A stretch of DNA of 64,000 bases. Source: Heterodontus francisci. Taxonomy: Eukaryota. The position numbers were made by a program, and so were the translations under genes. Location: the NCBI RefSeq assembly GCF_036365525.1, contig NC_090399.1, positions 46,284,430-46,348,429 of the forward strand, in the 5' to 3' direction. Position 1 is the stretch's first letter; every line of letters begins with the position of its first letter. The notes beneath the pieces are model-generated. The model saw nothing but the letters and a program-made list of their open reading frames with translations. It ran no database searches and had not been told where the DNA came from. Of the stretch, positions 1 through 59,745 are shown piece after piece.

Positions 1-539
1 AGGGGAAAGAGAGAAACAGGGGAAAAAGAGAAACACAGGGGAAACAGATAGTTGCAGAGGAAACAGAGAGACACAGCGGAAAGAGAGAGAATCACAGGGG
101 AAAGAGAGAGAATCACTGGAAACAGAGAGACACAGGGGAAACAGAGAGACAGGGGAAACACAGAGACACTTGGGAAACAGAGAAAAACAGGGGAAACACA
201 GGGGAAACACAGAGACACAGGGGAAACAGAGAGTCACAGGGGAAACAGAGAGTCACAGGGGAAACAGACAGTCACAGAGGATGCAGAGAGACAGAGGGGA
301 AACAGAGAGACACAGCAGAAACACAGCGGAAACAGACAGACACAGGGATTACAGAGAAAAACAGGGGAAGCAGAGAGTCGCAGGGGAAACAGAGAAACAA
401 AAGGGAAACAAACAGTTTCAGGGGAAACAGACAGAGACAGGCGAATCGGAGCGACACAGGCGAAACAGAGACACACAGGCCAAACTGAGAGACACAGGGG
501 AAACAGAGAGACACAGGAGAAACACAGGGGAAACAGAGA

Positions 540-3500
540 GACACAGGGGAAACAGAGAGAAATAGGGGAAAGAGAGAGAAATCGGGGGAACAGAGTCACA
601 GGGGAAACAAAGAGACACAGGGGAAACAGAGAGACACTGGGGAAAGAGAGAGAAATAGGGGAAACAGACAGACACCGGGGAAACAGAGAGACACAGGGGA
701 AACAGAGAGAAATAGGGGAAAGAGATAGAAATCGGGGGAACAGAGTCACAGGGGAAACAGAGAAATAGGGGAAACAGAGAGACACATGGGAAACAGAGAA
801 ACACAGGGGAAACAGTGTCACAGGGGAAACAGAAAGAAACAGGGGAAACAGAGAGACACAGGGGAAACAAAGAAACACAGGGCAAAGAGAGAGACACAGG
901 GGAAAGGGAGAGATGCAGGGTAAAGAGAGAGACGCAGGGGAAAGAGAGAGACACAGGGGAAAGAGAGAGACACAGGTGAAACAGAGAGAAATGGGGGAAA
1001 GTGAGAGAAATAGGGGAAACAGAGTCACAGTAGAAACTGAGAGAAATAGGGGACAGAGAGAGACACAGGGGAAAGAGAGAGACGCAGGTGAAAGAGAGAG
1101 AAATAAGGGACAGAGAGAGAAATAGGGGAAACAGAGTCACAGTGGAAACAGAGAGAAATAGCGGTAAGATAGAGACACAGGAAAAAGAGAGAGAAATAGA
1201 GGACAGAGAGAGACACAGGGGAAAGAGAGAGACGCAGGTGAAACAGAGAGAAATAGGGGAAACAGAGTCACAGTGGAAACAGAGAGAAATAGCTGAAAGA
1301 TAGAGACACAGGGGCAAGAGAGAGAAATAGGGGAAAGAGAGAGACACAGGGGAAAGATAGAGACACAGGGGAAACAGAGAGAAATAGGGGAAAGAGAGGG
1401 ACACAGGGGTAAGAGAGAGAAATAGGGGACAGAGAGAGAAATAGGGGAAACAGAGTCACAGGGGAAACAGAGAGAAATAGCGGAAAGAGAGAGACACAGG
1501 GGATACAGTGAGAAATAGGGGAAACAGAGAGACACAGGGGAAACAGAGAGAAAAATAGGGGAAAGAGAGGGACACAGGGGATGCAGTGAGAAATAGTGGA
1601 AAGATAGAGACACAGGGGAAACAGAGAGAAATAGGGGAAAGAGAGAGACACAGGGGAAAGAGAGAAAAATAGGGGAAAGAGAGGGACACAGTGGAAACAG
1701 AGAGAAATTGCGGAAAGATAGAGACACAGGGGAAAGAGAGAGAAATAGGGGAAAGAGAGAGACACAGGGGAAAGATAGAGACACAGGTGAAACAGAGAGA
1801 CATAGGGGAAAGAGAGAGACACAGGGGAAAGAGAGAGACACAGGGGAAAGAGAGAGACACAGGGGAAAGAGAGAGAAATAGGGTATACAGAGAGTCACAG
1901 GGCAAACAGGGAGAAATAAGGGAAAGAGAGAAACACAGCGGAAAGAGAGATAAATAGCGGAAACGGAGAGTCACAGGGGAAAGAGAGAGAAATAGGGTAA
2001 ACAAAGAGTCACAGGGGAAACAGAGAGAAATACGGGAAACAGTGTCATAGGGGAAACAGAAAGAAATCGGGGAAACAGAGAGAAATAGGGGGAACAGAGT
2101 CACAGGGGAAACAGAGATAAACAGGAGAAACAGAGAGACTCAGGGGAAACAGAGCGAAATAGGGGAAACAGAGAGACACAGGGGAAAGAGAGAGAAATCG
2201 GGGAAACAGAGAGACACAGGGGAAAGAGAGAGAAATAGGGGTAACAGAGAGAAATAGAGGAAAGAGAGTAACAGGGGAAACAGAAAGAAACAGGGGAACC
2301 AGAGAGACACAGGGGAAACAGAGAGAAATAGGGGAAACAGAGAGACACAGGGGAAACAGAGAGAAATAGGGGAAACAGAGAGACACAGGGAAAACGCAGA
2401 GACACAGGGGAAACAGAGAGAAATAGGGGAAAGAGAGAGAAATCGGGGGAACAGAGTCACAGGGGAAACAAAGAGACACAGGGGAAACAGAGAGACACTG
2501 GGGAAAGAGAGAGAAATAGGGGAAACAGACAGACACCGGGGAAACAGATAGACACAGGGGAAACAGAGAGAAATAGGGGAAAGAGATAGAAATCGGGGGA
2601 ACAGAGTCACAGGGGAAACAGAGAAATAGGGGAAACAGAGAGACACATGGGAAACAGAGAAACACAGGGGAAACAGTGTCACAGGGGAAACAGAAAGAAA
2701 CAGGGGAAACAGAGAGACACAGGGGAAACAAAGAAACACAGGGCAAAGAGAGAGACACAGGGGAAAGGGAGAGATGCAGGGTAAAGAGAGAGACGCAGGG
2801 GAAAGAGAGAGACACAGGGGAAAGAGAGAGACACAGGTGAAACAGAGAGAAATGGGGGAAAGTGAGAGAAATAGGGGAAACAGAGTCACAGTAGAAACTG
2901 AGAGAAATAGGGGACAGAGAGAGACACAGGGGAAAGAGAGAGACGCAGGTGAAAGAGAGAGAAATAAGGGACAGAGAGAGAAATAGGGGAAACAGAGTCA
3001 CAGTGGAAACAGAGAGAAATAGCTGAAAGATAGAGACACAGGGGCAAGAGAGAGAAATAGGGGAAAGAGAGAGACACAGGGGAAAGATAGAGACACAGGG
3101 GAAACAGAGAGAAATAGGGGAAAGAGAGGGACACAGGGGAAAGAGAGAGAAATAGGGGACAGAGAGAGAAATAGGGGAAACAGAGTCACAGGGGAAACAG
3201 AGAGAAATAGCGGAAAGAGAGAGACACAGGGGATACAGTGAGAAATAGGGGAAAGAGAGAGACACAGGGGAAACAGAGAGAAAAATAGGGGAAAGAGAGG
3301 GACACAGGGGATGCAGTGAGAAATAGTGGAAAGATAGAGACACAGGGGAAAGAGAGAGAAATAGGGGAAAGAGAGAGACACAGGGGAAAGAGAGAGAAAT
3401 CGGGGTAACAGAGAGAAATAGAGGAAAGAGAGTAACAGGGGAAACAGAAAGAAACAGGGGAACCAGAGAGACACAGGGGAAACAGAGAGAAATAGGGGAA

Positions 3501-6500
3501 ACAGAGAGACACAGGGGAAACAGAGAGAAATAGGGGAAACAGAGAGAAATCAGGGAAACAGAGATATACAGGAGGAAAGAGAGAGAAATAGGGGAAACAG
3601 AGAGACACAAGGGAAAGAGAGAGAAATAGGGGAAACAGAGAGACACAGGGGAAACAGAGAAACACAGGGGAAACAGTGTCACAGGGGAAACAGAAAGAAA
3701 CAGCGGAAACAGAGAGACACAGGGGAAACAAAGAAACACAGGGCAAAGAGAGAGACACAGGGGAAAGGGAGAGATGCAGGGTAAAGAGAGAGACGCAGGG
3801 GAAAGAGAGAGACACAGGGGAAAGAGAAAGACACAGGTGAAACAGAGAGAAATGGGGGAAAGTGAGAGAAATAGGGGAAACAGAGTCACAGTAGAAACTG
3901 AGAGAAATAGGGGACAGAGAGAGACACAGGGGAAAGAGAGAGACGCAGGTGAAAGAGACAGAAATAAGGGACAGAGAGAGAAATAGGGGAAACAGAGTCA
4001 CAGTGGAAACAGAGAGAAATAGCGGAAAGATAGAGACACAGGAAAAAGAGAGAGAAATAGAGGACAGAGAGAGGCACAGGGGAAAGAGAGAGACGCAGGT
4101 GAAACAGAGAGAAATAGGGGAAACAGAGTCACAGTGGAAACAGAGAGAAATAGCTGAAAGATAGAGACACAGGGGCAAGAGAGAGAAATAGGGGAAAGAG
4201 AGAGACACAGGGGAAAGATAGAGACACAGGGGAAACAGAGAGAAATAGGGGAAAGAGAGGGACACAGGGGAAAGAGAGAGAAATAGGGGACAGAGAGAGA
4301 AATAGGGGAAACAGAGTCACAGGGGAAACAGAGAGAAATAGCGGAAAGAGAGAGACACAGGGGATACAGTGAGAAATAGGGGAAAGAGAGAGACACAGGG
4401 GAAACAGAGAGAAAAATAGGGGAAAGAGAGGGACACAGTGGAAACGGAGAGAAATTGCGGAAAGATAGAGACACAGGGGAAAGAGAGAGAAATAGGGGAA
4501 AGAGAGAGACACAGGGGAAACAGAGAGAAATAGGGGAAAGAGAGAGACACAGGGGAAAGAGAGAAAAATAGGGGAAAGAGAGAGACACAGGGGAAACAGA
4601 GAAACACAGGGGAAACAGTGTCACAGGGGAAACAGAAAGAAACAGCGGAAACAGAGAGACACAGGGGAAACAAAGAAACACAGGGCAAAGAGAGAGACAC
4701 AGGGGAAAATGGAGAGATGCAGGGTAAAGAGAGAGACGCAGGGGAAAGAGAGAGACACAGGGGAAAGAGAGAGACACAGGTGAAACAGAGAGAAATGGGG
4801 GAAAGTGAGAGAAATAGGGGAAACAGAGTCACAGTAGAAACTGAGAGAAATAGGGGACAGAGAGAGACACAGGGGAAAGAGAGAGACGCAGGTGAAAGAG
4901 AGAGAAATAAGGGACAGAGAGAGAAATAGGGGAAACAGAGTCACAGTGGAAACAGAGAGAAATAGCGGAAAGATAGAGACACAGGAAAAAGAGAGAGAAA
5001 TAGAGGACAGAGAGAGACACAGGGGAAAGAGAGAGACGCAGGTGAAACAGAGAGAAATAGGGGAAACAGAGTCACAGTGGAAACAGAGAGAAATAGCTGA
5101 AAGATAGAGACACAGGGGCAAGAGAGAGAAATAGGGGAAAGAGAGAGACACAGGGGAAAGATAGAGACACAGGGGAAACAGAGAGAAATAGGGGAAAGAG
5201 AGGGACACAGGGGAAAGAGAGAGAAATAGGGGACAGAGAGAGAAATAGGGGAAACAGAGTCACAGGGGAAACAGAGAGAAATAGCGGAAAGAGAGAGACA
5301 CAGGGGATACAGTGAGAAATAGGGGAAAGAGAGAGACACAGGGGAAACAGAGAGAAAAATAGGGGAAAGAGAGGGACACAGGGGATGCAGTGAGAAATAG
5401 TGGAAAGATAGAGACACAGGGGAAACAGAGAGAAATAGGGGAAAGAGAGAGACACAGGGGAAAGAGAGAAAAATAGGGGAAAGAGAGGGACACAGTGGAA
5501 ACAGAGAGAAATTGCGGAAAGATAGAGACACAGGGGAAAGAGAGAGAAATAGGGGAAAGAGAGAGACACAGGGGAAAGATAGAGACACAGGTGAAACAGA
5601 GAGACATAGGGGAAAGAGAGAGACACAGGGGAAAGAGAGAGACACAGGGGAAAGAGAGAGACACAGGGGAAAGAGAGAGAAATAGGGGATACAGAGAGTC
5701 ACAGGGCAAACAGGGAGAAATAAGGGAAAGAGAGAAACACAGCGGAAAGAGAGATAAATAGCGGAAACGGAGAGTCACAGGGGAAAGAGAGAGAAATAGG
5801 GTAAACAAAGAGTCACAGGGGAAACAGAGAGAAATAGGGGAAACAGAGAGACACAGGGGAAACAGAGAGAAATAGGGGAAACAGAGAGAAATCAGGGAAA
5901 CAGAGATATACAGGAGGAAAGAGAGAGAAATAGGGGAAACAGAGAGACACAAGGGAAAGAGAGAGAAATAGGGGAAACAGAGAGACACAGGGGAAACAGA
6001 GAAACACAGGGGAAACAGTGTCACAGGGGAAACAGAAAAGAAACAGGGGAAACAGAGAGACACAGGGGAAACAAAGAAACACAGGGCAAAGAGAGAGACA
6101 CAGGGGAAAGGGAGAGATGCAGGGTAAAGAGAGAGACGCAGGGGAAAGAGAGAGACACAGGGGAAAGAGAAAGACACAGGTGAAACAGAGAGAAATGGGG
6201 GAAAGTGAGAGAAATAGGGGAAACAGAGTCACAGTAGAAACTGAGAGAAATAGGGGACAGAGAGAGACACAGGGGAAAGAGAGAGACGCAGGTGAAAGAG
6301 AGAGAAATAAGGGACAGAGAGAGAAATAGGGGAAACAGAGTCACAGTGGAAACAGAGAGAAATAGCGGAAAGATAGAGACACAGGAAAAAGAGAGAGAAA
6401 TAGAGGAGAGAGAGAGGCACAGGGGAAAGAGATAGACGCAGGTGAAACAGAGAGAAATAGGGGAAACAGAGTCACAGTGGAAACAGAGAGAAATAGCTGA

Positions 6501-9500
6501 AAGATAGAGACACAGGGGCAAGAGAGAGAAATAGGGGAAAGAGAGAGACACAGGGGAAAGATAGAGACACAGGGGAAACAGAGAGAAATAGGGGAAAGAG
6601 AGGGACACAGGGGTAAGAGAGAGAAATAGGGGACAGAGAGAGAAATAGGGGTAACAGAGTCACAGGGGAAACAGAGAGAAATAGGGGAAAGAGAGAGACA
6701 CAGGGGATACAGTGAGAAATAGGGGAAAGAGAGAGACACAGGGGAAACAGAGAGAAAAATAGGGGAAAGAGAGGGACACAGGGGATGCAGTGAGAAATAG
6801 TGGAAAGATAGAGACACAGGGGAAACAGAGAGAAATAGGGGAAAGAGAGAGACACAGGGGAAAGAGAGAAAAATAGGGGAAAGAGAGGGACACAGTGGAA
6901 ACAGAGAGAAATTGCGGAAAGATAGAGACACAGGGGAAAGAGAGAGAAATAGGGGAAAGAGAGAGACACAGGGGAAAGAGAGAGACACAGGGGAAAGAGA
7001 GAGAAATAGGGGATACAGAGAGTCACAGGGCAAACAGGGAGAAATAAGGGAAAGAGAGAAACACAGCGGAAAGAGAGATAAATAGCGGAAACGGAGAGTC
7101 ACAGGGGAAAGAGAGAGAAATAGGGTAAACAAAGAGTCACAGGGGAAACAGAGAGAAATAGGGGAAACAGTGTCATAGGGGAAACAGAAAGAAATCGGGG
7201 AAACAGAGAGACACAGGGGAAAGAGAGAGAAATAGGGGTAACAGAGAGAAATAGAGGAAAGAGAGTAACAGGGGAAACAGAAAGAAACAGGGGAACCAGA
7301 GAGACACAGGGGAAACAGAGAGAAATAGGGGAAACAGAGAGACACAGGGGAAACAGAGAGAAATAGGGGAAACAGAGAGAAATCAGGGAAACAGAGATAT
7401 ACAGGAGGAAAGAGAGAGAAATAGGGGAAACAGAGAGACACAAGGGAAAGAGAGAGAAATAGGGGAAACAGAGAGACACAGGGGAAACAGAGAAACACAG
7501 GGGAAACAGTGTCACAGGGGAAACAGAAAGAAACAGGGGAAACAGAGAGACACAGGGGAAACAAAGAAACACAGGGCAAAGAGAGAGACACAGGGGAAAG
7601 GGAGAGATGCAGGGTAAAGAGAGAGACGCAGGGGAAAGAGAGAGACACAGGGGAAAGAGAAAGACACAGGTGAAACAGAGAGAAATGGGGGAAAGTGAGA
7701 GAAATAGGGGAAACAGAGTCACAGTAGAAACTGAGAGAAATAGGGGACAGAGAGAGACACAGGGGAAAGAGAGAGACGCAGGTGAAAGAGACAGAAATAA
7801 GGGACAGAGAGAGAAATAGGGGAAACAGAGTCACAGTGGAAACAGAGAGAAATAGCGGAAAGATAGAGACACAGGAAAAAGAGAGAGAAATAGAGGACAG
7901 AGAGAGGCACAGGGGAAAGAGAGAGACGCAGGTGAAACAGAGAGAAATAGGGGAAACAGAGTCACAGTGGAAACAGAGAGAAATAGCTGAAAGATAGAGA
8001 CACAGGGGCAAGAGAGAGAAATAGGGGAAAGAGAGAGACACAGGGGAAAGATAGAGACACAGGGGAAACAGAGAGAAATAGGGGAAAGAGAGGGACACAG
8101 GGGAAAGAGAGAGAAATAGGGGACAGAGAGAGAAATAGGGGAAACAGAGTCACAGGGGAAACAGAGAGAAATAGCGGAAAGAGAGAGACACAGGGGATAC
8201 AGTGAGAAATAGGGGAAAGAGAGAGACACAGGGGAAACAGAGAGAAAAATAGGGGAAAGAGAGGGACACAGTGGAAACGGAGAGAAATTGCGGAAAGATA
8301 GAGACACAGGGGAAAGAGAGAGAAATAGGGGAAAGAGAGAGACACAGGGGAAACAGAGAGAAATAGGGGAAAGAGAGAGACACAGGGGAAAGAGAGAAAA
8401 ATAGGGGAAAGAGAGAGACACAGGGGAAACAGAGAAACACAGGGGAAACAGTGTCACAGGGGAAACAGAAAGAAACAGCGGAAACAGAGAGACACAGGAA
8501 AAACAAAGAAACACAGGGCAAAGAGAGAGACACAGGGGAAAATGGAGAGATGCAGGGTAAAGAGAGAGACGCAGGGGAAAGAGAGAGACACAGGGGAAAG
8601 AGAGAGACACAGGTGAAACAGAGAGAAATGGGGGAAAGTGAGAGAAATAGGGGAAACAGAGTCACAGTAGAAACTGAGAGAAATAGGGGACAGAGAGAGA
8701 CACAGGGGAAAGAGAGAGACGCAGGTGAAAGAGAGAGAAATAAGGGACAGAGAGAGAAATAGGGGAAACAGAGTCACAGTGGAAACAGAGAGAAATAGCG
8801 GAAAGATAGAGACACAGGAAAAAGAGAGAGAAATAGAGGACAGAGAGAGACACAGGGGAAAGAGAGAGACGCAGGTGAAACAGAGAGAAATAGGGGAAAC
8901 AGAGTCACAGTGGAAACAGAGAGAAATAGCTGAAAGATAGAGACACAGGGGCAAGAGAGAGAAATAGGGGAAAGAGAGAGACACAGGGGAAAGATAGAGA
9001 CACAGGGGAAACAGAGAGAAATAGGGGAAAGAGAGGGACACAGGGGAAAGAGAGAGAAATAGGGGACAGAGAGAGAAATAGGGGAAACAGAGTCACAGGG
9101 GAAACAGAGAGAAATAGCGGAAAGAGAGAGACACAGGGGATACAGTGAGAAATAGGGGAAAGAGAGAGACACAGGGGAAACAGAGAGAAAAATAGGGGAA
9201 AGAGAGGGACACAGTGGAAACGGAGAGAAATTGCGGAAAGATAGAGACACAGGGGAAAGAGAGAGAAATAGGGGAAAGAGAGAGACACAGGGGAAACAGA
9301 GAGAAATAGGGGAAAGAGAGAGACACAGGGGAAAGAGAGAAAAATAGGGGAAAGAGAGAGACACAGGGGAAACAGAGAAACACAGGGGAAACAGTGTCAC
9401 AGGGGAAACAGAAAGAAACAGCGGAAACAGAGAGACACAGGAAAAACAAAGAAACACAGGGCAAAGAGAGAGACACAGGGGAAAATGGAGAGATGCAGGG

Positions 9501-44800: not shown

Positions 44801-46100
44801 AGGGGAAACGCAGAGATACAGGGGAAAGAGAGAGACACAGGTGAAACAGAGAGAAATGGGGGAAAAAGAGACACAGGGGAAAGAGAGAGAAATAAGCGAC
44901 AGAGAGAGAAATAGGGCAAACAGAGTCACAGGGGAAACAGAGAGAAATAGCAAAAAGAGAGAGACACAGGGGAAACAGTGAGAAATAGGGGAAAGAGAGT
45001 GACACAGCGGAAAGAGAGAAAATTAAGGGAAAGAGAGAAAATTAAGGGAAAGAGAGAAAATTAAGGGGAAACACAGATAAACAGGGGAAACAAAGAGACA
45101 CAGGAGAAATGGGGGAAACAGAGAGACACAGGGGAAACACAGAGAAATAGGGGAAACAGAGAGAAAAGGGGAAACAGAGAGACACAGGGGTAACAGAGAG
45201 TTAAAGGGGAAACAGAGAGACACAGGGGAAAGAGAGAAAGGCAGGGGAAATAGAGAATCACAGGGGAAACAGAGTGTCTAAGAGGAAACAGCGAGTCATG
45301 GGGTTATCGAGAGAAACAGGGGAACAGAGAGGCACAGGGGAAACAGAGAAGCACAGGGGAAACACAGAGACACTTGGGAAACAGATAGTCACAGGGGAAA
45401 CACAGAGACACTTGGGAAACAGAGAAAAACAGGGGAAACAGAGAGACACAGGGGAAACAGAGAGACACAGGCGAGACGTGGAGACACAGGGGAAATAGAG
45501 AGACACAGGGGAAACAGAGAGACACGGGGGAAACAGGGAGACACAGGTGAAATGCAGGGGAAACAGAGAGACACAGGGGAAACAGAGAGTCACAAGGGAA
45601 ACAGACAGTCTCAGGGGAAACAGACAGTCTCAGGGGAAAGAGAGAAACACTGGGGAAGGAGAGAGACACTGGGGAAGGAGAGAGACACTGGGGAAAGAGA
45701 GAGTCACAAGGGAAACAGAGAGACACAGGGGAAATAGAGAGACACAGGAGAAACACAGGGGAAACAGAGAAACACAGGGCAACAGAGAGACACAGGGGAA
45801 ACATAGAAAAACAGGGGAAACAGAGAGTCGCAGGGGAAACAGAGAGTCGCAGGGGAAACTGGCAGATACAGGCGAAACAGAGAGACACAGGCTAAACCGG
45901 GAGACACAGGCGAAACCAAGAGTCACAAACGAAACCGAGAGACACAGGGGAAGCAGAGAAAAACAGGGGAAAAGGAGAGACACAGGTGAAGCAGAGAGAC
46001 ACAGGTGAAACAGAGTCACAGGGAAACAGAGAGACAAGGGGAAAGAGAGAAACACAGGGGAAGGAGAGAAACACAGGGGAAAGAGAGAGAAACAAGGGAA
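35850..46100. repeat. Higher-order repeat domain with 1828, 2211 and 1761 bp periods
   Basis: Identical pseudo-ORF pairs: 37440/39268 and 37835/39663 (1828); 39962/42173 and 41051/43262 (2211); 43262/45023 and 43513/45274 (1761). Boundaries are approximate. Confidence 0.85.
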
Positions 46101-46199
46101 GCAGAATGATACAGGGGAAGGAGAGAGTCACAGGGGAAGGAGAGAAACACAGGGGAAAGAGAGAAACACAGGGGAAAGAGAGAGACACAGGGGAAAGAG

Positions 46200-49100: not shown

Positions 49101-52100
49101 AATAGGGGAAAGAGAGAGACACAGGGGAAAGAGAGAAAAGTAAGGGAAAGAGAGGGACACAGGGGAAAGAGAGAGAAATAGGGGAAAGAGAGAGACACAG
49201 GGGAAAGAGAGAGAAATAGGGGTAACAGAGCGAAATAGGGGATAGAGAGAGACACGGGGGAAACAGAGTGACACAGGGGAAAGAGAGAGAAATAGGGGAA
49301 AGAGAGAGACACAGGGGAAAGAGAGAGAAATAGGGGTAACAGAGCGAAATAGGGGATAGAGAGAGACACGGGGGAAACAGAGAGACACAGGGGAAACAGA
49401 GAGAAATAGGGGATAGAGAGAGACATGGGGGAAACAGAGAGACACAGGGCAAAGAGAGCGAAATAGGGGATAGAGAGAGACACGGGGGAAACAGAGAGAC
49501 ACAGGGGAAACAGAGAAACAAGCAGAAACGGAGAGACACAGGGGAAATAGAGATTCACAGAGGATACAGAGAGACACAGGGGAAACAGAGAGACACAGGG
49601 GAAACAGAGAGAAATAGGGGAAAGAGAGATAAATAGGGGAAACACAGAGACACAGGGGAAAGAGCCAGAAATAGGGGAAACAGAGTGACACCGGGGAGAG
49701 AGAGAGAAAGAGGGGGATCAGACAGACACCGGGGAAACAGACAGACACCGGGGAAACAGAAAGACACAGGGGAAACGGAGAGAAATAGGGGAAACAGAGA
49801 GACACAGGGGAAACAGAGTCACAGTGGAAACAGAGAGAAACAGGGGAAACAGAGAGACACAGGGGAAAGAGAGAGAAATAGGGGAAACAGACAGACACCG
49901 GCGAAACAGAGAGACACAGGGGAAACAGCGAGAAACAGGGGAAAGAGAGAGAAATCGGGGAAACAGAGTCACGGGGAAGCAGCGAGAAATAGGGGAAATA
50001 GAGAGACACGGGAAACAGAGAGAAATAGGGGAAACAGAGTCACAGTAGAAACTGAGAGAAATAGGGGAAAGAGAGTCACAGGGGAAACAGAGAAAAATAG
50101 CGGAAAGATAGAGACACAGGGGAAACAGAGAGAAATAGGGGAAAGAGAGAGACACAGGTGAAAGAGAAAGAAATAAGGGACAGAGAGAGAAATAGGGGAA
50201 ACGGAGTCACAGGGGAAACAGAGAGAAATAGCGGAAAGATAGAGACACAGGGGAAAGAGAGAAAAATAGGGGAAAGTGAGGGACACAGGGGAAAGAGAGA
50301 GACACAGAGGAAACAGAGAGAAATAGGGGATAGAGAGAGACACGGGGGAAACAGAGAGACACAGGGGAAACAGAGAAACAAGCAGAAACGGAGAGACACA
50401 GGGGAAATAGAGATTCACAGAGGATACAGAGAGACACAGGGGAAACAGAGAGACACAGGGGAAACAGAGAGAAATAGGGGAAAGAGAGATAAATAGGGGA
50501 AACACAGAGACACAGGGGAAAGAGCCAGAAATAGGGGAAACAGAGTGACACCGGGGAGAGAGAGAGAAAGAGGGGGATCAGACAGACACCGGGGAAACAG
50601 ACAGACACCGGGGAAACAGAAAGACACAGGGGAAACAGAGAGAAATAGGGGAAACAGAGAGACACAGGGGAAACAGAGTCACAGTGGAAACAGAGAGAAA
50701 CAGGGGAAACAGAGAGACACAGGGGAAAGAGAGAGAAATAGGGGAAACAGACAGACACCGGCGAAACAGAGAGACACAGGGGAAACAGCGAGAAACAGGG
50801 GAAAGAGAGAGAAATCGGGGAAACAGAGTCACGGGGAAGCAGCGAGAAATAGGGGAAATAGAGAGACACGGGAAACAGAGAGAAATAGGGGAAACAGAGT
50901 CACAGTAGAAACTGAGAGAAATAGGGGAAAGAGAGTCACAGGGGAAACAGAGAAAAATAGCGGAAAGATAGAGACACAGGGGAAACAGAGAGAAATAGGG
51001 GAAAGAGAGAGACACAGGTGAAAGAGAAAGAAATAAGGGACAGAGAGAGAAATAGGGGAAACGGAGTCACAGGGGAAACAGAGAGAAATAGCGGAAAGAT
51101 AGAGACACAGGGGAAAGAGAGAAAAATAGGGGAAAGTGAGGGACACAGGGGAAAGAGAGAGACACAGAGGAAACAGAGAGAAATAGGGGATACAGAGAGT
51201 CACAGGGGAAACAGGGAGAAATAGGGGAAAGAGAGAGAAATAGGGGAAACAGAGAGACACAGGGGAAACAGAGAGACACAGGGGAAACAGAGAGAAATAG
51301 GGGAAACTGAGAGACACAGGGGAAACAGAGCGAAATAGGGGAAACAGAGAGAAATAGGAGAAACAGAGAGACACAGGGGAAACAGAGAAAAATTGGGGAA
51401 ACAGAGAGAAATCGGGGAAACACAGATAAACAGGGGAAACAGAGAGACACAGGGGAAACGGAGAGATATAGGGGAAACAGAGAGAAATAGGGGAAACAGA
51501 GAGACACAGGGAAAACGCAGAGACACAGGGGAAAGAGAGAGACACAGGGGAAAGAGAGAGACACAGGGGACACAGAGAGACACGGGGGAAACAGAGAGAC
51601 ACAGAGGAAAGAGAGGAAGGCAGGGGAAATAGAGAAATACAGGTGAAACAGAGTGTCTAAGAGGAAACAGCGAGTCATGGGGTTATAGAGAGAAACAGGG
51701 GAACAAAGTGTCACAGGGGAAACAGAGCAAAATAGGGGAAACAGAGAGAAATAGGGGAAACAGAGAGAAATAGGGGATACAGAGTGTCACAGGGGAAACA
51801 GGGAGAAATAGGGGAAAGAGAGAGACACAGCGGAAAGAGAGAGAAATAGGGGAAACAGAGAGACACAGGGGAAAGAGAGAGAAATAGGGGAAACAAAGTG
51901 TCACAGGGGAAACAGAGAAATAGGGGAAACTGAGAGACACAGGGGAAACAGAGCGAAATAGGGGAAACAGAGAGAAATAGGAGAAACAGAGAGACACAGG
52001 GGAAACGGAGAGATATAGGGGAAACAGAGAGAAATAAGGGAAACAGAGAGACACAGGGGAAAGAGAGAGAAATAGGGGAAACAAAGTGTCACAGGGGAAA

Positions 52101-55100
52101 CAGAGAAATAGGGGAAACTGAGAGACACAGGGGAAACAGAGCGAAATAGGGGAAACAGAGAGAAATAGGGGATACAGAGAGAAATAGGGGATACAGAGAG
52201 TCACAGGGGAAACAGGGAGAAATAGGGGAAAGCGAGGGACACAGGGGAAAGAGAGAAAATTAAGGGAAAGAGAGAGACACAGGGGAAAGAGAGAGACACA
52301 GAGGAAACAGAGAGAAATAGGAGAAACAGAGAGACACAGGGGAAACAGAGCGAAATAGGGGAAACAGAGAGAAATAGGGGAAACTGAGAGACACAGGGGA
52401 AACGGAGAGAAACAGGAGAAACAGAGAGACACAGGGGAAACAGAGCGAAATAGGGGAAACAGAGAGAAATAAGAGAAACAAAGTGTCACAGGGGAAACAG
52501 AGAAATAGGGGAAACTGAGAGACACAGGGGAAACAGAGCAAAATAGGGGAAACAGAGAGAAATAGGGGATACAGAGTGTCACAGGGGAAACAGGGAGAAA
52601 TAGGGGAAAGAGAGAGACACAGCGGAAAGAGAGAGAAATAGGGGAAACAGAGAGACACAGGGGAAAGAGAGAGAAATAGGGGAAAGAGAGAGACACAGCG
52701 GAAAGAGAGAGACACAGGGGAAACAGAGCGAAATAGGGGAAACAGAGAGAAATAGGGGAAAGCGATAGAAATAGGGGAAACAGAGAGACACAGGGGACAC
52801 AGAGAGACACCGGGAAAACGCAGAGACACAGGGGAAAGAGAGAGACACAGGTGAAACAGAGAGAAATAGGGGAAAGAGGGAGACACAGGGGAAAGAGAGA
52901 AAATTAAGGGAAAGAGAGGGACACGGGGAAAGAGAGAGAAATAAGGGACAGAGAAAGAAATAGGGCAAACAGAGTCACAGAGGAAACAGAGAGAAATAAC
53001 GGAAAGAGAGAGACACAGGGGAAAGAGAGAAAATTAAGGGAAAGAGAGGGACACAGGGGAAAGAGAGAGAAATAGGGGTAACAGAGCGAAATAGGGGACA
53101 GAGAGAGACACGGGGGAAACAGAGAGACACAGGGGAAACAGAGAAACAAGCAGAAACGGAGAGACACAGGGGAAATAGAGATTCACAGAAGATACAGAGA
53201 GACACAGGGGAAACAGAGAGACACAGGGGAAGGCGAGAGAAATGGGGGAAACAGTGTCACAGGGGAAACAGAGAGAAATAGGGGAAAGAGAGAGACACAG
53301 GGGAAACAGAGAGACACAGGGGACACAGTGAGACACCAGGAAAACGCAGAGACACAGGGGAAAGAGAGAGACACAGGTGAAACAGAGAGAAATGGGGGAA
53401 ACAGTGTCACAGGGGAAACAGAGAGAAATAGGGGAAAGAGAGAGACACAGGGGAAACAGAGAGAAATAGGGGAAAGAGAGAGACACAGGGGAAAGAGAGA
53501 AAAGTAAGGGAAAGAGAGGGACACAGGGGAAAGAGAGAGAAATAGGGGAAAGAGAGAGACACAGGGGAAAGAGAGAGAAATAGGGGTAACAGAGCGAAAT
53601 AGGGGATAGAGAGAGACACGGGGGAAACAGAGTGACACAGGGGAAAGAGAGAGAAATAGGGGAAAGAGAGAGACACAGGGGAAAGAGAGAGAAATAGGGG
53701 TAACAGAGCGAAATAGGGGATAGAGAGAGACACGGGGGAAACAGAGAGACACAGGGGAAACAGAGAGAAATAGGGGATAGAGAGAGACACGGGGGAAACA
53801 GAGAGACACAGGGGAAACAGAGAAACAAGCAGAAACGGAGAGACACAGGGGAAATAGAGATTCACAGAGGATACAGAGAGACACAGGGGAAACAGAGAGA
53901 CACAGGGGAAACAGAGAGAAATAGGGGAAAGAGAGATAAATAGGGGAAACACAGAGACACAGGGGAAAGAGCCAGAAATAGGGGAAACAGAGTGACACCG
54001 GGGAGAGAGAGAGAAAGAGGGGGATCAGACAGACACCGGGGAAACAGACAGACACCGGGGAAACAGAAAGACACAGGGGAAACAGAGAGAAATAGGGGAA
54101 ACAGAGAGACACAGGGGAAACAGAGTCACAGTGGAAACAGAGAGAAACAGGGGAAACAGAGAGACACAGGGGAAAGAGAGAGAAATAGGGGAAACAGACA
54201 GACACCGGCGAAACAGAGAGACACAGGGGAAACAACGAGAAACAGGGGAAAGAGAGAGAAATCGGGGAAACAGAGTCACGGGGAAGCAGCGAGAAATAGG
54301 GGAAATAGAGAGACACGGGAAACAGAGAGAAATAGGGGAAACAGAGTCACAGTAGAAACTGAGAGAAATAGGGGAAAGAGAGTCACAGGGGAAACAGAGA
54401 AAAATAGCGGAAAGATAGAGACACAGGGGAAACAGAGAGAAATAGGGGAAAGAGAGAGACACAGGTGAAAGAGAAAGAAATAAGGGACAGAGAGAGAAAT
54501 AGGGGAAACGGAGTCACAGGGGAAACAGAGAGAAATAGCGGAAAGATAGAGACACAGGGGAAAGAGAGAAAAATAGGGGAAAGTGAGGGACACAGGGGAA
54601 AGAGAGAGACACAGAGGAAACAGAGAGAAATAGGGGATAGAGAGAGACACGGGGGAAACAGAGAGACACAGGGGAAACAGAGAAACAAGCAGAAACGGAG
54701 AGACACAGGGGAAATAGAGATTCACAGAGGATACAGAGAGACACAGGGGAAACAGAGAGACACAGGGGAAACAGAGAGAAATAGGGGAAAGAGAGATAAA
54801 TAGGGGAAACACAGAGACACAGGGGAAAGAGCCAGAAATAGGGGAAACAGAGTGACACCGGGGAGAGAGAGAGAAAGAGGGGGATCAGACAGACACCGGG
54901 GAAACAGACAGACACCGGGGAAACAGAAAGACACAGGGGAAACGGAGAGAAATAGGGGAAACAGAGAGACACAGGGGAAACAGAGTCACAGTGGAAACAG
55001 AGAGAAACAGGGGAAACAGAGAGACACAGGGGAAAGAGAGAGAAATAGGGGAAACAGACAGACACCGGCGAAACAGAGAGACACAGGGGAAACAGCGAGA

Positions 55101-56050
55101 AACAGGGGAAAGAGAGAGAAATCGGGGAAACAGAGTCACGGGGAAGCAGCGAGAAATAGGGGAAATAGAGAGACACGGGAAACAGAGAGAAATAGGGGAA
55201 ACAGAGTCACAGTAGAAACTGAGAGAAATAGGGGAAAGAGAGTCACAGGGGAAACAGAGAAAAATAGCGGAAAGATAGAGACACAGGGGAAACAGAGAGA
55301 AATAGGGGAAAGAGAGAGACACAGGTGAAAGAGAAAGAAATAAGGGACAGAGAGAGAAATAGGGGAAACGGAGTCACAGGGGAAACAGAGAGAAATAGCG
55401 GAAAGATAGAGACACGGGGAAAGAGAGAAAAATAGGGGAAAGTGAGGGACACAGGGGAAAGAGAGAGACACAGAGGAAACAGAGAGAAATAGGGGATACA
55501 GAGAGTCACAGGGGAAACAGGGAGAAATAGGGGAAAGAGAGAGACACAGCGGAAAGAGAGAGAAATAGGGGAAACAGAGAGACACAGGGGAAACAGAGAG
55601 ACACAGGGGAAACAGAGAGAAATAGGGGAAACTGAGAGACACAGGGGAAACAGAGCGAAATAGGGGAAACAGAGATAAATAGGAGAAACAGAGAGACACA
55701 GGGGAAACAGAGAAAAATTGGGGAAACAGAGAGAAATCGGGGAAACACAGATAAACAGGGGAAACAGAGAGACACAGGGGAAATGGAGAGAAATAGGGGA
55801 AACAGAGAGACACAGGGGAAACGGAGAGATATAGGGGAAACAGAGAGAAATAGGGGAAACAGAGAGACACAGGGAAAACGCAGAGACACAGGGGAAAGAG
55901 AGAGACACAGGGGAAAGAGAGAGACACAGGGGACACAGAGAGACACGGGGGAAACAGAGAGACACAGAGGAAAGAGAGGAAGGCAGGGTAAATAGAGAAA
56001 TACAGGTGAAACAGAGTGTCTAAGAGGAAACAGCGAGTCATGGGGTTATA
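46200..56050. repeat. Higher-order repeat domain: 860-bp duplication nested in a ~4.3-kb duplication
   Basis: Pseudo-ORF 'MTPGRERERGGSDRH' occurs at 49685, 50545, 53992 and 54852 (offsets 860 and 4307). Other offsets: 48540/52904 (4364) and 47651/51901 (4250). Confidence 0.85.
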
Positions 56051-56484
56051 GAGAGAAACAGGGGAACAGAGAGGCACAGGGGAAACAGAGAGGCACAGGG
56101 TTATAGAGAGACACGGGGGACATAGGGAGACACAGGGGAAACAGAAACACAGGGAAACAGAGAGTCATGGGGTTATAGAGAGAAACAGGGGAAACAGAGA
56201 GGCACAGAGGAAACAGAGAGAAATAGGGGATACAGAGAGTCACAGGGGAAACAGGGAGAAATAGGGGAAAGAGAGAGACACAGCGGAAAGAGAGAGAAAT
56301 AGGGGAAACAGAGAGACACAGGGGAAACAGAGAGGCACAGGGTTATAGAGAGACACGGGGGACATAGGGAGACACAGGGGAAACAGAAACACAGGGAAAC
56401 AGAGAGTCATGGGGTTATAGAGAGAAACAGGGGAAACAGAGAGGCACAGGGGAAACAAAATAAAAACAGGGGAAACAGGAGACA

Positions 56485-58497
56485 CATAGAAACACAGAAA
56501 ATAGGAGCAGGAGTAGGCCATTCGGCCCTTTGAGCCTGCTCCGCCATTCATTAGATCATGGCTGATCATTCAAATCATTGACCTGTTCCCGATTTCGCCC
56601 CATATCCTTTGATCCTTTTTAACCTAAGCGCTATATCTAACTCCTTCTTGAAAACATATGATATGTTGGCTTCAACTGCTTTCTGTGGTAACGAATTCCA
56701 TAGGCTCACCACTCTTTGGGTGAAGTAATTTCTCCTCGTCTCAGTCCTGAAAGGTTTAACCCATATCCGTGGACTATGACCCCTGGTTCTGGACTCCCCC
56801 ACCATCGGGAACATCCTTCCTGCATCTACCCTGTCAAGTCCTGTTAGAATTTTATAGGTTTCTATGAGATCCCCCTTCTTCTGAATTCCAGCGAATATAA
56901 ACCTAACCAACTCAATCTCTCCTCATATGTCAGTCCCGCCATCCCAGGAATCAGTCTGGCAAACCTTCATTGCACTCCCTTTATAGCAAGGTCATCCTCC
57001 CTCAGATAAGGAGACCAAAACTGCACAGAATAATACAGGTGTGGCCTCACCAAGGCCCTGTATAATTGCAGCAAGACATCCCTGCTTCTGTACTCGAATC
57101 CTCTCGCTATGAAGGCCAACATACCATTTGTCTTTTTTACCGCCTGTTGCACCTGCATGCTTACCTTCTGCGACTGTTGTACGAGAACACCTAGGTCTTG
57201 CTGCATATTCCCCTCTCTCAGTTTATAGCAGTTCAGATAATAATCTGCCTTCCTGTTTTTGCTACCAAAATGGATAACCTCACATTTATTCACATTATAC
57301 TGCATCTGCCATGCATTAGCCCACTCACTCAACTTGTCCAAATCACCCTGAAGCCTCTCTGCATCCTCTTCACAACTCACCATCCCAACCAGTTTTGTGT
57401 CATCTGCAAATTTGGAGTTATTACATTTAGTTCCCTCATGTAAATCATTCATATATATTGTGAATAGCTGGGGTCCTGGCCCAAATCCCTGCAGTACCCC
57501 ACTAGTCACTGCCTGCCATTTGGAAAAAGACCCATTGATCCCTACTCTTTGTTTCCTGTCTGCCAACCAATTTTCTATCCATCACAATACACTATCCCCA
57601 ATCCCATGTGCTTTAATTTTACATGTTAATCTCTTATGTGGGACTTTGTCGAAAGCCTTCTGAAAGTCCAAATAAACCATATCCACTGGCTCCCCCTCAT
57701 CAACTCTACTAGTTACATCCTCGAAGAAATCTGCTAGATTTGTCAAGCATGATTTCCCTTTCGTAAATCCATGCTGACACTGCCCGATTCTACCACTCTT
57801 CTCCAAATGTTCTGCTATAAAATCTTTGATAATGGACTCTAGAATTTTCCCCACTACTGATGTCAGGCTGACTGGTCTATAATTCCTTGCTTTCTCTCTA
57901 CCTCCCTGTTTAAATAGTGGGGTTACAGTAGCTACCCTCCAATCTGTAGGAACTGTTCCAGAGTCTATAGAATCTTGGAAGATGACCAACAATGCATCCA
58001 CTATTCCTAGGGCCACTTCCATAAGTTCTCTGGGATGCAGACCATCAGTCCCTGGGGATTTATCGGCCTTCAATCCCATCAATTTCCCCAACACTATTTC
58101 TCTACCAATACTGATTTCCTTCAAGTTCCTGTCTCTCACTAAACCCTGTGTTCCCCAACATTTCTCGTATTATATTTGTGTCCTCCTTTGTGAAGACAGA
58201 ACCAAAGTATGCATTTAGTTGGTCAGCCAATTTTAATTCCCCATAAGAAATTCCCCTGCTTCTGATTGTGAGGGACCTACATTTGTCTTCACCAATCTTT
58301 TTCTCTTCACCTACCTATAGAAATGTTTACAGTCAGTTTTTATGTACCCCGCAAGCTTGCTCTCCTACTCTATTTTACTCTTCTTAATCAATCCTTGGTC
58401 CTCCTTTGCTGAATTCTAAACTGCTCCCAATCCTCAGGTCTGTTGTTTTTTCTGGAAAATTTATATGCCTCTTCCTTGGATCTAATGCTATCTCTAA
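56485..58497 (-). mobile_element. 5'-truncated CR1-clade LINE (3' half of ORF2, 3'UTR and octamer tail), elasmobranch HER1-like
   Basis: Minus-strand frames carry RT motifs: KSPGTDGLHP, NYRPVSLTS, QHGF, YLDFQKAFDKVPH, GVLQG, LFTIYMNDL, KFADDTKL, plus the CR1 C-terminal motifs RPHLxY/WSP and FTQRVVSLWNSLP. The 3' end reads ...GGCCGAATGGCCTACTCCTGCTCCTAT followed by TTTCTGTG TTTCTATG (56500-56485), a CR1-type octamer tail. Confidence 0.95.
56575..58139 (-). pseudogene. Disrupted CR1 ORF2 reverse transcriptase
   Basis: Split into three consecutive ORF pieces (57582-58139, 56967-57566, 56575-56910) by stops or frameshifts. The endonuclease domain is absent. Confidence 0.92.
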
Positions 58498-59075
58498 AGA
58501 GACATGGGGAATAGACAGACAAGGTGGGCATAGAGAGATACAGGGGGAATAGAGAGACAAAGTGAAAATAGAGATATACAGGATTAGCGAGATAGGGGGA
58601 TTAGAGTGATACAGAGGTTCAGTGAGACACGTGGGGAATAGAGAAATACAGGGGAATAGAGAAACATAGGGAATAAGGGACAAGGGGGGCAATAGAGGGA
58701 AACGGGGGGCAGTAAAGAGACACAGGGAGAAGAGACATGGGGGATTAGAGGGACATGGAGGGCAATAGAGGGACACGGGAGGAATAGAGAGACTTGGGGA
58801 TTAGAGGGTCACGTTGGGAATAGAGTAACACAGGGTTCCAGAGAAACAAGGGCAAATAGAGAGTCATGGGTTCGGGGGGGGGGGGGGGGGGGGTGGGAAT
58901 AAAGCGACACAGTGGCATAGAGAGAGACGGGAGAGTAGAGAGACATGGGAAATAGAGAGACATGGGGAATTGAGAGACAAGAAGGAAGAGAGAGTCACGG
59001 GGAGAATAGACAGACACGGAGGGAATAGAGAGATACAGGAGGAAAAGCATGATGTGGTGGAGAATTGAGAGACAC
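58498..59075. repeat. Highly degenerate remnant of the AG-rich satellite (~18-19 bp unit, GAGACAYGGGGAATAGA-like)
   Basis: Units such as GAGACATGGGGAATAGA, GAAATACAGGGGAATAGA and GAGACACAGGGAGAA have the same strand polarity as the main array. It shares the GAGTCATGGG variant (58861) with the right-hand part of the array. Confidence 0.8.
58874..58893 (+). repeat. G20 homopolymer
   Basis: 20 consecutive G, read directly. Confidence 0.95.
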
Positions 59076-59432
59076 GAAGCTCTTAACGCCTGGGACACTG
59101 AGCTCCACCCCAGGACACCGAGATCTCTCCACCCCAGCTACACAGTGCTCCAACTCCAGGGAAGCTGAGATCTCTTTACCCAGGGGCATATAGCTTCACC
59201 CCAGGAACACAGAGCTACACGCCATGGACACAGAACTGCAACCCTCCCCCATCCCCCAGCCCCACTGTAGTGTACAGAACTCCACCACAGGCACACACAG
59301 ACCTCTAGCTGGGACAAGAGCTCCACCACCAGCACCCCCAGACCTCGAACTGGGACAGAGCTCTACCACAGATCACAGAGCTCCATACCAGGGACACAGA
59401 TCCTGCTCCAATGCTACCTGCACACACCTAGC
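59076..59432. repeat. Degenerate ~21-24 bp tandem repeat (consensus ~GGGACACAGAGCTCCACCCCA)
   Basis: Successive units include gggacactgagctccacccca, ggacaccgagatctctccacccca, ggggcatatagcttcacccca, ggaacacagagctacacgcca, gggacaagagctccaccacca and gggacagagctctaccaca. Confidence 0.8.
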
Positions 59433-59447
59433 TGGCCCTGCTCGCAA

Positions 59448-59453
59448 ACTCAC
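59448..59453 (-). promoter_or_regulatory. 5' splice donor GTGAGT of the MHC alpha-1 exon
   Basis: Plus-strand actcac is the reverse complement of the consensus GTGAGT, directly after the NQTS(G) codons. Confidence 0.85.
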
Positions 59454-59715: not shown

Positions 59716-59745
59716 CTAAAACAGAGATAGAGAGAGAGAGACATC
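59716..59745 (-). promoter_or_regulatory. 3' splice acceptor and polypyrimidine tract of the MHC alpha-1 exon
   Basis: Minus strand reads ...gatgtctctctctctctatctctgttttag; the AG is at 59717-59716. Confidence 0.85.

What the first reader, a model, noticed from the sequence alone, without database searches (positions are those of the whole stretch)
1..59453. MHC class I intron 2 apparently inflated to >59 kb by a satellite (or alpha-1 exon orphaned)
Seen: the gene reads leftward from the donor at 59453 through a 21-bp repeat, the decayed satellite, a CR1 and >56 kb of pure minisatellite. I found no alpha-2 exon there. Established: alpha-2 is the next exon, and in mammals this intron is only a few hundred bp. 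Inference: either this is a satellite-filled giant intron separating the two halves of the ligand-binding groove, reminiscent of Drosophila Y-loop gene intron gigantism, or the gene was broken by the expansion. A repeat shared between paralogues here could promote alpha-1/alpha-2 exon shuffling by unequal exchange.
Basis: partly seen in the sequence, partly recalled or inferred. Interest (0 to 1): 0.8.

Follow-up and report, generated by a model that had tools for sequence, protein, structure and literature searches.

The report
Expressed shark MHC exon, satellite-filled intron
A lone but transcribed and spliced exon of a divergent shark MHC class I gene sits next to at least 56 kb of a 19-base tandem repeat, so the intron that splits the ligand-binding groove is probably a giant, satellite-filled one, although its far end lies outside the stretch examined.

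Summary
A 19-bp satellite runs without interruption over 8-56486. Then come a 5'-truncated LINE, a decayed relative of the satellite, a loose ~21/41-bp repeat, and a minus-strand MHC class I alpha-1 exon (59715-59454) with strong splice sites. The window holds no alpha-2, alpha-3 or leader exon.

New here: in four runs of one sample, a single contig per run covers exactly the exon, with 0 mismatches. Each contig carries 43-139 unmatched letters on the alpha-2 side and 49 on the leader side. The neighbouring intron has zero depth. So the exon is transcribed and spliced at both borders.

The assembled exon has one extra base (59675) that shifts the frame and gives stops after 26 codons. All four contigs lack that base and read in frame.

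In the transcribed sense the array is 85% pyrimidine and nearly free of splice-site-like motifs. It is built of recently duplicated kb-scale blocks.

Best reading (0.6): exon 2 of a live non-classical class I gene whose intron 2 is at least 59.4 kb, mostly satellite. Not shown: where the next exon lies, and whether the RNA comes from this copy, its allele or a twin paralogue. The scan already reported satellite-filled introns in another class I gene of this genome. Exon shuffling is untested.

The parts
8..56486 (-). 19-bp satellite array of about 3000 units. It continues beyond the left edge of the window. Read in the sense of the gene it is pyrimidine-rich (unit is the reverse complement of AGAGAGACACAGGGGAAAC).
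   Evidence: TRF. No interruption. Minus-strand composition T 0.479, C 0.370, G 0.102, A 0.049; AG 119 against 282 expected; 15 Y8NYAG; 0 GTRAG. Identity at lag 19 is 0.75. 31 of 56 1-kb chunks have a copy >=99% identical elsewhere in the array.
56487..58497 (-). 5'-truncated LINE fragment with reverse-transcriptase ORFs, inserted between the homogeneous array and its decayed margin. Same orientation as the gene.
   Evidence: ORFs. RVT_1 E 1.1e-12 and 1.3e-9. High-copy contigs run on unlike the window after 58497, table 7. The CR1 clade was not tested.
58498..59044 (-). Decayed relative of the same satellite (unit AGACACAGGGGGAATAGAG). It includes a G24 run at 58874-58897.
   Evidence: TRF (period 19-20, 61-65% matches). 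Zero depth in all four runs (table 2).
59060..59420 (-). Loosely periodic ~21/41-bp repeat in the first 400 nt of the intron.
   Evidence: TRF: 21 bp x2.0 at 59192-59234; 41 bp x2.4 at 59274-59370. Zero depth over 58500-59299.
59452..59453 (-). GT of the splice donor (G|GTGAGT). Intron 2 starts here and runs leftward.
   Evidence: Sequence. In all four runs the part of the contig that fits the window stops at 59453 (table 8); the single base past the exon end (59454) is taken as a chance match.
59454..59715 (-). MHC class I alpha-1 exon (exon 2, phase 1 at both ends). It is 262 nt as assembled and 261 nt in the RNA-like contigs.
   Evidence: One contig per run lies on 59453-59716 with 0 other letters and 1 gap (table 8).
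59675..59675 (-). Extra base in the assembly that shifts the frame between ...FITS and IPNLPEF.... It is absent from all four contigs.
   Evidence: table 4 ('59675 left out 1', depth_with equals depth in X1-X4). Frames. Stops after 26 codons as assembled.
59716..59717 (-). AG of the splice acceptor, behind a long pyrimidine tract (CTCTCTCTCTATCTCTGTTTTAG). Intron 1 extends rightward for at least 3.7 kb.
   Evidence: Sequence. In all four runs the part of the contig that fits stops at 59716, and its 49 further letters lie nowhere in 59717-63490.
59717..63480 (.). Intron 1 as far as it can be seen: a high-copy element (about 59790-60300) and a plus-strand LINE-like element (about 60900-63480). 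It ends at an assembly gap of 200 N (63481-63680).
   Evidence: ORFs. Five ORFs between 56575 and 63992 without a Pfam family at E<=0.01. Depths in the thousands, table 2. N run.

Best explanation
59715-59454 (minus strand) is exon 2, the alpha-1 domain, of an expressed and strongly divergent non-classical MHC class I gene of a cartilaginous fish.

Shown: the exon has strong splice sites in the canonical class I phase (1-1). Contigs that behave as RNA carry it joined at both borders to sequence absent from the neighbourhood. The window holds no other class I exon. Left of the donor there are 59,453 nt, of which 56,479 are one 19-bp satellite.

Inferred: the primary transcript runs through the array in its pyrimidine-rich sense, and the whole array is removed as part of one giant intron 2 of at least 59.4 kb. 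If the class I-like gene noted 38.8 kb left of the window supplies the remaining exons, the intron is about 98 kb.

Splicing across the array is plausible. The array offers almost nothing that looks like a splice site: its consensus unit has no A in the RNA sense, there are 119 AG in 56.5 kb, and there is no GTRAG. So the strong donor has no nearby competitor, and vertebrate exon definition does the rest.

The array grew, and probably still changes length, by unequal exchange of kb-scale blocks. Neighbouring units are only about 75% alike, yet more than half of the 1-kb chunks have a copy at least 99% identical elsewhere in the array. A LINE inserted into the array's older margin.

The assembled copy carries one extra base (59675) that breaks the frame. 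The RNA lacks it. So the reference is either a null allele, a rare consensus error, or a dead twin of the expressed copy.
For: Exon identity.

Splice sites, phase and length.

Use in RNA. One contig per run (355, 355, 451 and 451 nt; word depth 136, 110, 74 and 33) lies on 59453-59716 with 0 other letters. Each has 43 or 139 unlaid letters on the left and 49 on the right. Depth is zero over 58500-59299 in 4 of 4 runs, which a DNA run of this locus would not show. The one-base overlaps at each border fit a leader ending in G and a next exon starting with G, giving Gly codons as in class I genes (recalled).

No other class I exon in the window.

Array continuity and composition.

Block duplications.

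No assembly gap between array and exon: the only N run is 63481-63680.

An unchecked note of this scan reports the same architecture, expressed and annotated, in another class I gene of this genome (s1-872915).
Against: The acceptor-side partner was never seen. The unlaid letters of the contigs were not printed, and the scaffold left of the window could not be read.

All four runs are one sample of one study. Their RNA nature is the tool's guess plus my inference.

The assembled exon is frameshifted while the contigs are not, so the RNA may come from the other allele or from a near-identical paralogue (table 4).

No protein among the 252 retrieved carries this alpha-1. The best identity is 41.7%, although four Heterodontus francisci class I products were among them. 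So no listed annotated product joins this exon to an alpha-2. Only the best 120 rows of each search are listed, so this is suggestive only.

A 56-kb array holding many 100%-identical kb blocks is hard to assemble, so its length is uncertain.

Pfam MHC_I is below its gathering score (22.6 against 28.3 bits), as expected for half a domain.
Confidence: 0.6

Rival explanations
1. Dead duplicate. The copy in the window is a pseudo-exon, or part of a pseudogene, with a real and fixed frameshift, possibly cut off from the rest of its gene by the array. The RNA comes from a very recent paralogue elsewhere that has the same exon without the extra base.
For: As assembled the exon stops after 26 codons, and every contig lacks base 59675 (table 4). 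The base is not in a homopolymer, so a consensus error is not the obvious explanation. First-stage notes list other lone or divergent class I alpha-1 exons on the same piece, for example s1-872936 with 261 letters (unchecked). Elasmobranch non-classical lineages UEA and UBA are multicopy (PMC10751288, passages).
Against: Apart from that base the contigs match the window at 261 of 261 positions, and both splice sites are intact. A copy that recent would probably share the flanking architecture, so the giant intron would still hold for the live copy. A heterozygous null allele explains the same data.
Confidence: 0.2
2. Assembly artefact. The array is misplaced, over-expanded or collapsed, and the real intron 2 is much shorter or differently composed.
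For: 31 of 56 1-kb chunks have a copy >=99% identical elsewhere in the array, at many different offsets. Such structure defeats read-length-limited assembly. The exon itself differs from the RNA by one base. A scaffold gap lies 3.8 kb to the right.
Against: There is no N between array and exon. The transition is gradual and biologically sensible: a homogeneous array, a LINE insertion, a decayed array of the same family, then unique intron. Notes of the scan report similar satellite-filled class I and class II introns at several other places in this genome (unchecked).
Confidence: 0.12
3. The exon is transcribed but spliced into something other than a class I mRNA: a chimeric, non-coding or decay-targeted transcript. 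In that case there is no alpha-1/alpha-2 giant intron.
For: The letters joined to the exon were not seen. No listed annotated product holds this alpha-1.
Against: The RNA form is in frame. The exon is used at the canonical class I borders and phase, with one-base overlaps that fit Gly codons at both junctions. Word depth of 33-136 is not trace level.
Confidence: 0.08

Closest known systems
Satellite-DNA-containing gigantic introns of Drosophila Y-linked fertility genes kl-3 and kl-5 (PMC6508621, abstract seen in the listing)
   Same: Small exons separated by an intron made mostly of simple tandem repeats. The repeats must be transcribed and removed for the gene to be expressed.
   Different: The Drosophila introns are megabase-sized, in testis-specific genes on a heterochromatic Y, with a dedicated expression programme. 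Here the seen length is at least 59 kb (perhaps about 100 kb), in a vertebrate immune-gene family. The far splice site was not seen, and nothing is known of tissue or programme.
Enlarged intron 2 of salmonid classical class I UBA, with recombination in it (PMC1971071, passages)
   Different: The passages read give no content for the salmonid intron. From recall only it is on the order of 10-20 kb and is not described as a satellite. That gene is classical and polymorphic. No recombination evidence exists here.
Elasmobranch non-classical class I lineages UBA, UDA, UEA, UFA (PMC10751288, passages)
   Same: A divergent class I alpha-1 in a cartilaginous fish. The residues that hold peptide ends in classical molecules are replaced.
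   Different: Lineage could not be assigned. The best identity to any of 252 retrieved class I proteins is 41.7%, and no labelled UDA, UEA or UFA reference was available. The main text of that paper has no occurrence of 'intron' or 'satellite'. Its supplements were not seen.
Another class I gene of the same genome with satellite-filled introns (scan note s1-872915 with follow-up; unchecked here)
   Same: Small class I exons as islands in more than 60 kb of tandem repeats, reported as expressed.
   Different: That gene is reported as already annotated, and one of its repeat families as derived from an exon and splice site. Here the 19-mer shows no exon origin, and no listed annotated product contains the exon.

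Membership tests
MHC class I heavy chain, alpha-1 domain (Pfam PF00129) | Significant sequence match to the class I alpha-1/alpha-2 profile | tested here: inconclusive
   MHC_I E 8.8e-5 but 22.6 bits, below the 28.3 cut-off. Only half the profile (19-88 of 179) can match a single exon. Supporting: best PDB hit 6lup_A, titled 'MHC class I protein', E 2.6e-4. 11 library hits, best 5.4e-10; of the 5 looked up, 3 carry an MHC class I or class I-like name and 2 are 'uncharacterized protein'. 229 of 252 class I proteins hit the exon by tblastn.
MHC class I heavy chain, alpha-1 domain (Pfam PF00129) | Exon 2 of about 260-270 nt with phase 1 at both ends, starting (G)SHS and ending near the N-glycosylation motif | tested here: met
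   Acceptor ...TTTTAG|GC TCT CAC TCT gives (G)SHSL. Donor AGT G|GTGAGT. NQT is kept four codons before the end. The exon is 261 nt in the contigs and 262 nt in the assembly.
MHC class I heavy chain, alpha-1 domain (Pfam PF00129) | Alpha-2, alpha-3 and transmembrane exons downstream on the same strand | tested here: not met
   None is present in the 59,453 nt downstream that the window holds. Whether they lie beyond the window could not be tested.
Classical (peptide-presenting) class I | Conserved alpha-1 residues that hold the peptide ends (Tyr7, Tyr59, Arg/Tyr84; positions recalled, numbered on the 6LUP chain) | tested here: not met
   Alignment A3: position 7 is Gly, 59 is His (60 is Thr instead of Trp) and 84 is Leu. 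The four shark class I sequences aligned as classical-type (P0181, P0145, P0166, P0175) keep Tyr7 and Tyr59. Hence non-classical. Alpha-2 residues are unknown.
Satellite-filled gigantic intron (Drosophila kl-3/kl-5 type) | Intron body made mostly of tandem satellite | tested here: met
   56,479 of the 59,453 intron bases seen are one 19-bp array, and a further 547 are its decayed relative.
Satellite-filled gigantic intron (Drosophila kl-3/kl-5 type) | The exons on both sides of the array are joined in one mature RNA | tested here: inconclusive
   The donor-side exon is spliced to something 43-139+ nt long that is not in 57500-59452. The partner's position was not seen.
Satellite-filled gigantic intron (Drosophila kl-3/kl-5 type) | Hundreds of kb to Mb in size, with a dedicated expression programme | not testable with these tools
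   Only a lower bound of 59.4 kb is available. Tissue and timing are unknown.
Orphan or silent pseudo-exon | No spliced transcripts contain it | tested here: not met
   4 of 4 runs (one sample) hold a contig with the exon joined at both borders to other sequence.
Orphan or silent pseudo-exon | Reading frame disrupted | tested here: met
   The assembled copy has one extra base at 59675 and stops after 26 codons. The RNA form does not.

The most novel reading that the evidence does not exclude
Giant introns filled with fast-turning-over satellite are a recurrent and tolerated, perhaps exploited, feature of MHC genes in this shark. The arrays are oriented or composed so that the RNA is pyrimidine-rich and nearly free of AG and GTRAG, and therefore invisible to the splicing machinery. 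[quoted passage not shown] It would uncouple the two halves of the binding groove, allowing alpha-1/alpha-2 reshuffling between alleles or paralogues. The roughly 3000 UCUCU-type tracts per transcript could also bind pyrimidine-tract proteins and delay expression.
Probability: 0.15. Interest if true: 0.8.

Novelty: new variant of a known kind. Interest (0 to 1): 0.5.

Why it matters
Class I genes are usually compact. From recall, intron 2 is a few hundred bp in mammals. [quoted passage not shown]

An expressed class I gene whose intron 2 is tens of kb of satellite would be a vertebrate, immune-gene counterpart of the Drosophila satellite introns. It would show that exon definition copes with about 3000 tandem pyrimidine-rich units. 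It would also give a concrete locus at which to test whether such arrays promote exon shuffling, length polymorphism or null alleles.

It has a practical side as well. No listed annotated product contains this exon, so gene counts for shark non-classical class I may be too low wherever exons are stranded between satellites.

Tried and rejected
Finding the partner exon or an annotated product:
- The 73-aa piece alone found no candidate of 40-128 aa.
- A profile with a carp-family class I protein as first row returned 1671 hits, but the 120 listed were almost all cyprinid.
- A profile with a skate class I fragment as first row returned 532 hits from 831 candidates. The 120 listed included four Heterodontus francisci class I products, none with this alpha-1.
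- Only the best 120 rows are shown, so a product holding the exon could have been scored but not listed.
- The whole-library HMMER search found only distant relatives, 25-38% identity.
So neither the horn-shark class I loci nor their introns could be fetched, and the test 'is the 19-mer in intron 2 of paralogues' could not be run.

Earlier findings by sequence, with the array and with the exon, were blank.

A leader exon was sought with the N-termini of four horn-shark class I proteins and not found (best E 1.6). Rfam found nothing in 56400-64000. My first self-comparison of the array returned nothing because of its settings and was replaced.

Rejected readings:
- Satellite derived from the exon: no similarity was seen between the unit and the exon.
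- The runs are DNA: zero depth on unique intron, and contigs end at the splice sites.
- AG depletion as proof of selection: the consensus unit simply has no A in that sense.

Literature: eight searches turned up no paper describing satellite-filled introns in shark MHC genes. Most subscription papers on shark class I are not in the library. The main text of PMC10751288 has no occurrence of 'intron' or 'satellite'. Its supplements, which may hold gene coordinates, were not requested because supplements are closed.

The joined step was left out. The pieces 59713-59675 and 59673-59455 were searched and aligned apart.
Full report
WHAT IS THERE

The window is dominated by one tandem array. TRF reports a 19-bp unit (AGAGAGACACAGGGGAAAC) from 8 to 56486, 2999.6 copies, 77% matches. 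GC skew and AT skew are flat and extreme up to 56000 and collapse after it. In 250-bp bins no stretch of the array drops below 0.768 purine, so nothing such as an exon or a transposon interrupts it. The array starts within 8 bases of the window edge, so it continues to the left.

To the right of the array, in order:
- A LINE fragment on the minus strand. Two ORFs match RVT_1 at E 1.1e-12 and 1.3e-9. Contigs of other copies diverge after 58497, so it is 5'-truncated there. I did not test whether it is a CR1.
- A decayed 19-20-bp relative of the same satellite at 58498-59044, 61-65% matches.
- About 400 nt with only weak 21/41-bp periodicity.
- The exon.

THE EXON

On the minus strand the sequence reads ...CTCTCTCTCTATCTCTGTTTTAG|GCTCTCACTCTCTC... 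at 59717/59715, and ...ACTAGTG|GTGAGT at 59454/59453. This is a strong acceptor and donor in the phase-1/phase-1 arrangement of class I exon 2 (arrangement recalled).

The 73-residue piece 59673-59455 matches class I as follows:
- Pfam MHC_I at E 8.8e-5. The 22.6 bits are under the 28.3 cut-off, as half a domain must be.
- The structure 6lup_A, titled 'MHC class I protein', at E 2.6e-4. The copy of that chain (P0181) is labelled Ginglymostoma cirratum.
- 11 representatives of 1.84 billion at E<=1e-3, best 5.4e-10. Of the five I looked up, three carry an MHC class I or class I-like name (a skate, a plaice and a carp-family fish) and two are named 'uncharacterized protein' (a manta and a rabbitfish).

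The exon is very divergent. The best identity is 41.7%, to a Mustelus protein, and 41.1% to a Heterodontus francisci class I. Aligned with shark class I sequences, position 7 is Gly, 59 is His, 60 is Thr and 84 is Leu, where the classical-type rows keep Tyr7 and Tyr59 (positions 60 and 84 are not uniform among them). The NQT glycosylation motif is kept. The roles of these positions are recalled, not tested. So this is a non-classical alpha-1. I could not assign it to a named elasmobranch lineage.

As assembled the exon is 262 nt. The frame set by the acceptor gives SHSLQGFFTFITS and then runs into two stops after 26 codons. The rest of the domain, IPNLPEF...NNQTS, is in another frame. One base too many lies between the two pieces.

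EXPRESSION

The exon alone was used to find runs. Four runs of one sample and one study hold it. The tool labels them 'RNA?' as a guess.

Laid on 57500-63490, each run has exactly one contig on the exon: 355, 355, 451 and 451 nt, at word depth 136, 110, 74 and 33. Each contig fits 59453-59716 with 0 other letters and one gap. Table 4 places the gap at 59675, 'left out 1', with depth_with equal to depth in all four runs. Removing that base reads ...ACT TCG ATT CCC..., that is ...T S I P..., which is in frame.

Each contig has 43 or 139 further letters on the left and 49 on the right that lie nowhere in the laid stretch. Depth is zero over 58500-59299 in all four runs. A DNA run of this locus would cover the unique intron flank and would not stop at the splice sites. 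So the runs behave as RNA, and the exon is spliced at both borders.

The one-base overlaps (59453 and 59716, both G in the gene's sense) fit a leader exon ending in G and a next exon beginning with G. These are the Gly codons usual at both class I junctions (recalled).

This counts as one sample, not four. Contigs drop rare variants, so a minor frameshifted RNA is not excluded.

WHAT IS NOT THERE

tblastn of 13 and then of 252 class I proteins found no alpha-2, alpha-3 or transmembrane match on either strand. 280 of 281 HSPs at E<=0.01 lie on the exon. The remaining one is the LINE-derived N-terminus of an annotated horn-shark protein hitting the LINE. No leader was found with four horn-shark signal peptides, and the contigs' 49 leader-side letters do not lie in 59717-63490.

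So within the window intron 2 is at least 59,453 nt. Intron 1 is at least 3.7 kb and runs into a 200-N gap at 63481-63680, which I left alone. There is no gap between the array and the exon.

THE ARRAY AS AN INTRON

In the sense of the gene the array is 47.9% T, 37.0% C, 10.2% G and 4.9% A. It has:
- 119 AG dinucleotides in 56,479 nt, against 282 expected from base composition;
- 15 matches to Y8NYAG;
- no GTRAG.

The consensus unit has no A in that sense, so the poverty in acceptors is a property of the unit. I do not claim selection for it. It does explain how a strong donor could skip about 3000 units: there is almost nothing to splice to.

Neighbouring units are only about 75% identical (lag 19). 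Yet 31 of 56 1-kb chunks have a copy at least 99% identical elsewhere in the array, at offsets from 0.9 to 12.5 kb, while 15 of 56 have none above 92%. The array is therefore old in its units and young in its blocks. This is the signature of repeated unequal exchange, and its length is likely to vary between haplotypes. The same property makes its assembled length uncertain.

The decayed array on the exon side of the LINE shows that the LINE inserted into an array that already existed and that began about 400 nt from the donor.

WHAT I COULD NOT REACH

The unlaid letters of the contigs were not printed, and read laying has one call.

Three protein searches found no product carrying this alpha-1, although Heterodontus francisci class I products are in the collection. 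So the exon is probably missing from the annotation. Only 120 rows per search are visible, so this is not certain.

First-stage notes of the scan, which are unchecked titles only, place an 'apparently intact non-classical class I-like gene' of 10,721 letters 38,832 letters left of the window. They place its 'alpha2-alpha3 intron' (736 letters) 39,101 letters left.

The 269 letters between the two right ends are about one exon. This fits either a minus-strand gene whose rightmost exon is alpha-2, which would make our exon its alpha-1 across about 98 kb. Or it fits a plus-strand gene ending in alpha-3, which would then be a neighbour. I cannot tell which.

A follow-up note (s1-872915) says that another expressed, annotated class I gene of this genome has exons as islands in more than 60 kb of tandem repeats. 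Other notes report similar cases for class I and class II. So the scan has met this architecture before on other DNA. I did not check those notes.

READING

Most likely (0.6): a live non-classical class I gene whose intron 2 is a giant satellite-filled intron. The reference copy carries a one-base frameshift that is a null allele, an error or the mark of a dead twin.

Rivals:
- A dead duplicate, with the RNA coming from a twin paralogue (0.2).
- Mis-assembly of the array (0.12).
- Splicing into something that is not a class I mRNA (0.08).

COMPARISON WITH WHAT IS KNOWN

The Drosophila kl-3 and kl-5 satellite introns are the closest in kind (PMC6508621, abstract). They are megabase-sized and testis-specific.

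The salmonid UBA gene has an enlarged intron 2 in which recombination places exon 2 onto different downstream exons (PMC1971071, passages).

The main text of the 2023 survey of cartilaginous-fish MHC has no occurrence of 'intron' or 'satellite' (PMC10751288; supplements not seen). Eight literature searches found no description of satellite-filled introns in shark MHC genes.

I rate it a new variant of a known kind, of moderate interest, because the decisive link, the far end of the intron, is still missing.

Noticed in passing
window 58874-58897: A run of 24 G (91% matches) inside the decayed satellite. Read laying noted that reads seem cut around 58865-58904.
   Followed up: no
window 57819-57959 and protein P0189: An annotated Heterodontus francisci class I product (402 aa) starts with about 43 residues that match the reverse-transcriptase LINE family present in this intron (tblastn E 9.8e-9, 55% identity). 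This looks like a transposon-derived or mis-annotated first exon in a paralogue.
   Followed up: partly
window 56440-56500: Read on the minus strand, the 3' end of the LINE (…CCTATTTTCTGTGTTTCTATGTGTCTCC) resembles the satellite unit it abuts (…TGTTTCCCCTGTGTCTCTCT). The LINE tail may have primed on the satellite, or the exact border may be blurred. This comes from reading only.
   Followed up: no
window 59790-60300: A high-copy element starts about 75 nt upstream of the exon's acceptor. Contig depth is in the thousands and there are many short-sided joints (tables 2 and 5). It was not classified.
   Followed up: no
window 60900-63480 and 63681-64000: A plus-strand LINE-like element with long ORFs and no Pfam family at E<=0.01. 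It is cut by the 200-N assembly gap at 63481-63680. A different minus-strand ORF follows the gap. The gap was left untouched.
   Followed up: no
window 58392 and 60724: Contigs in all four runs show a one-base insertion behind 58392 and a one-base omission at 60724 (table 4). Both sites lie in repeated elements, so these probably reflect other copies and not this locus.
   Followed up: no
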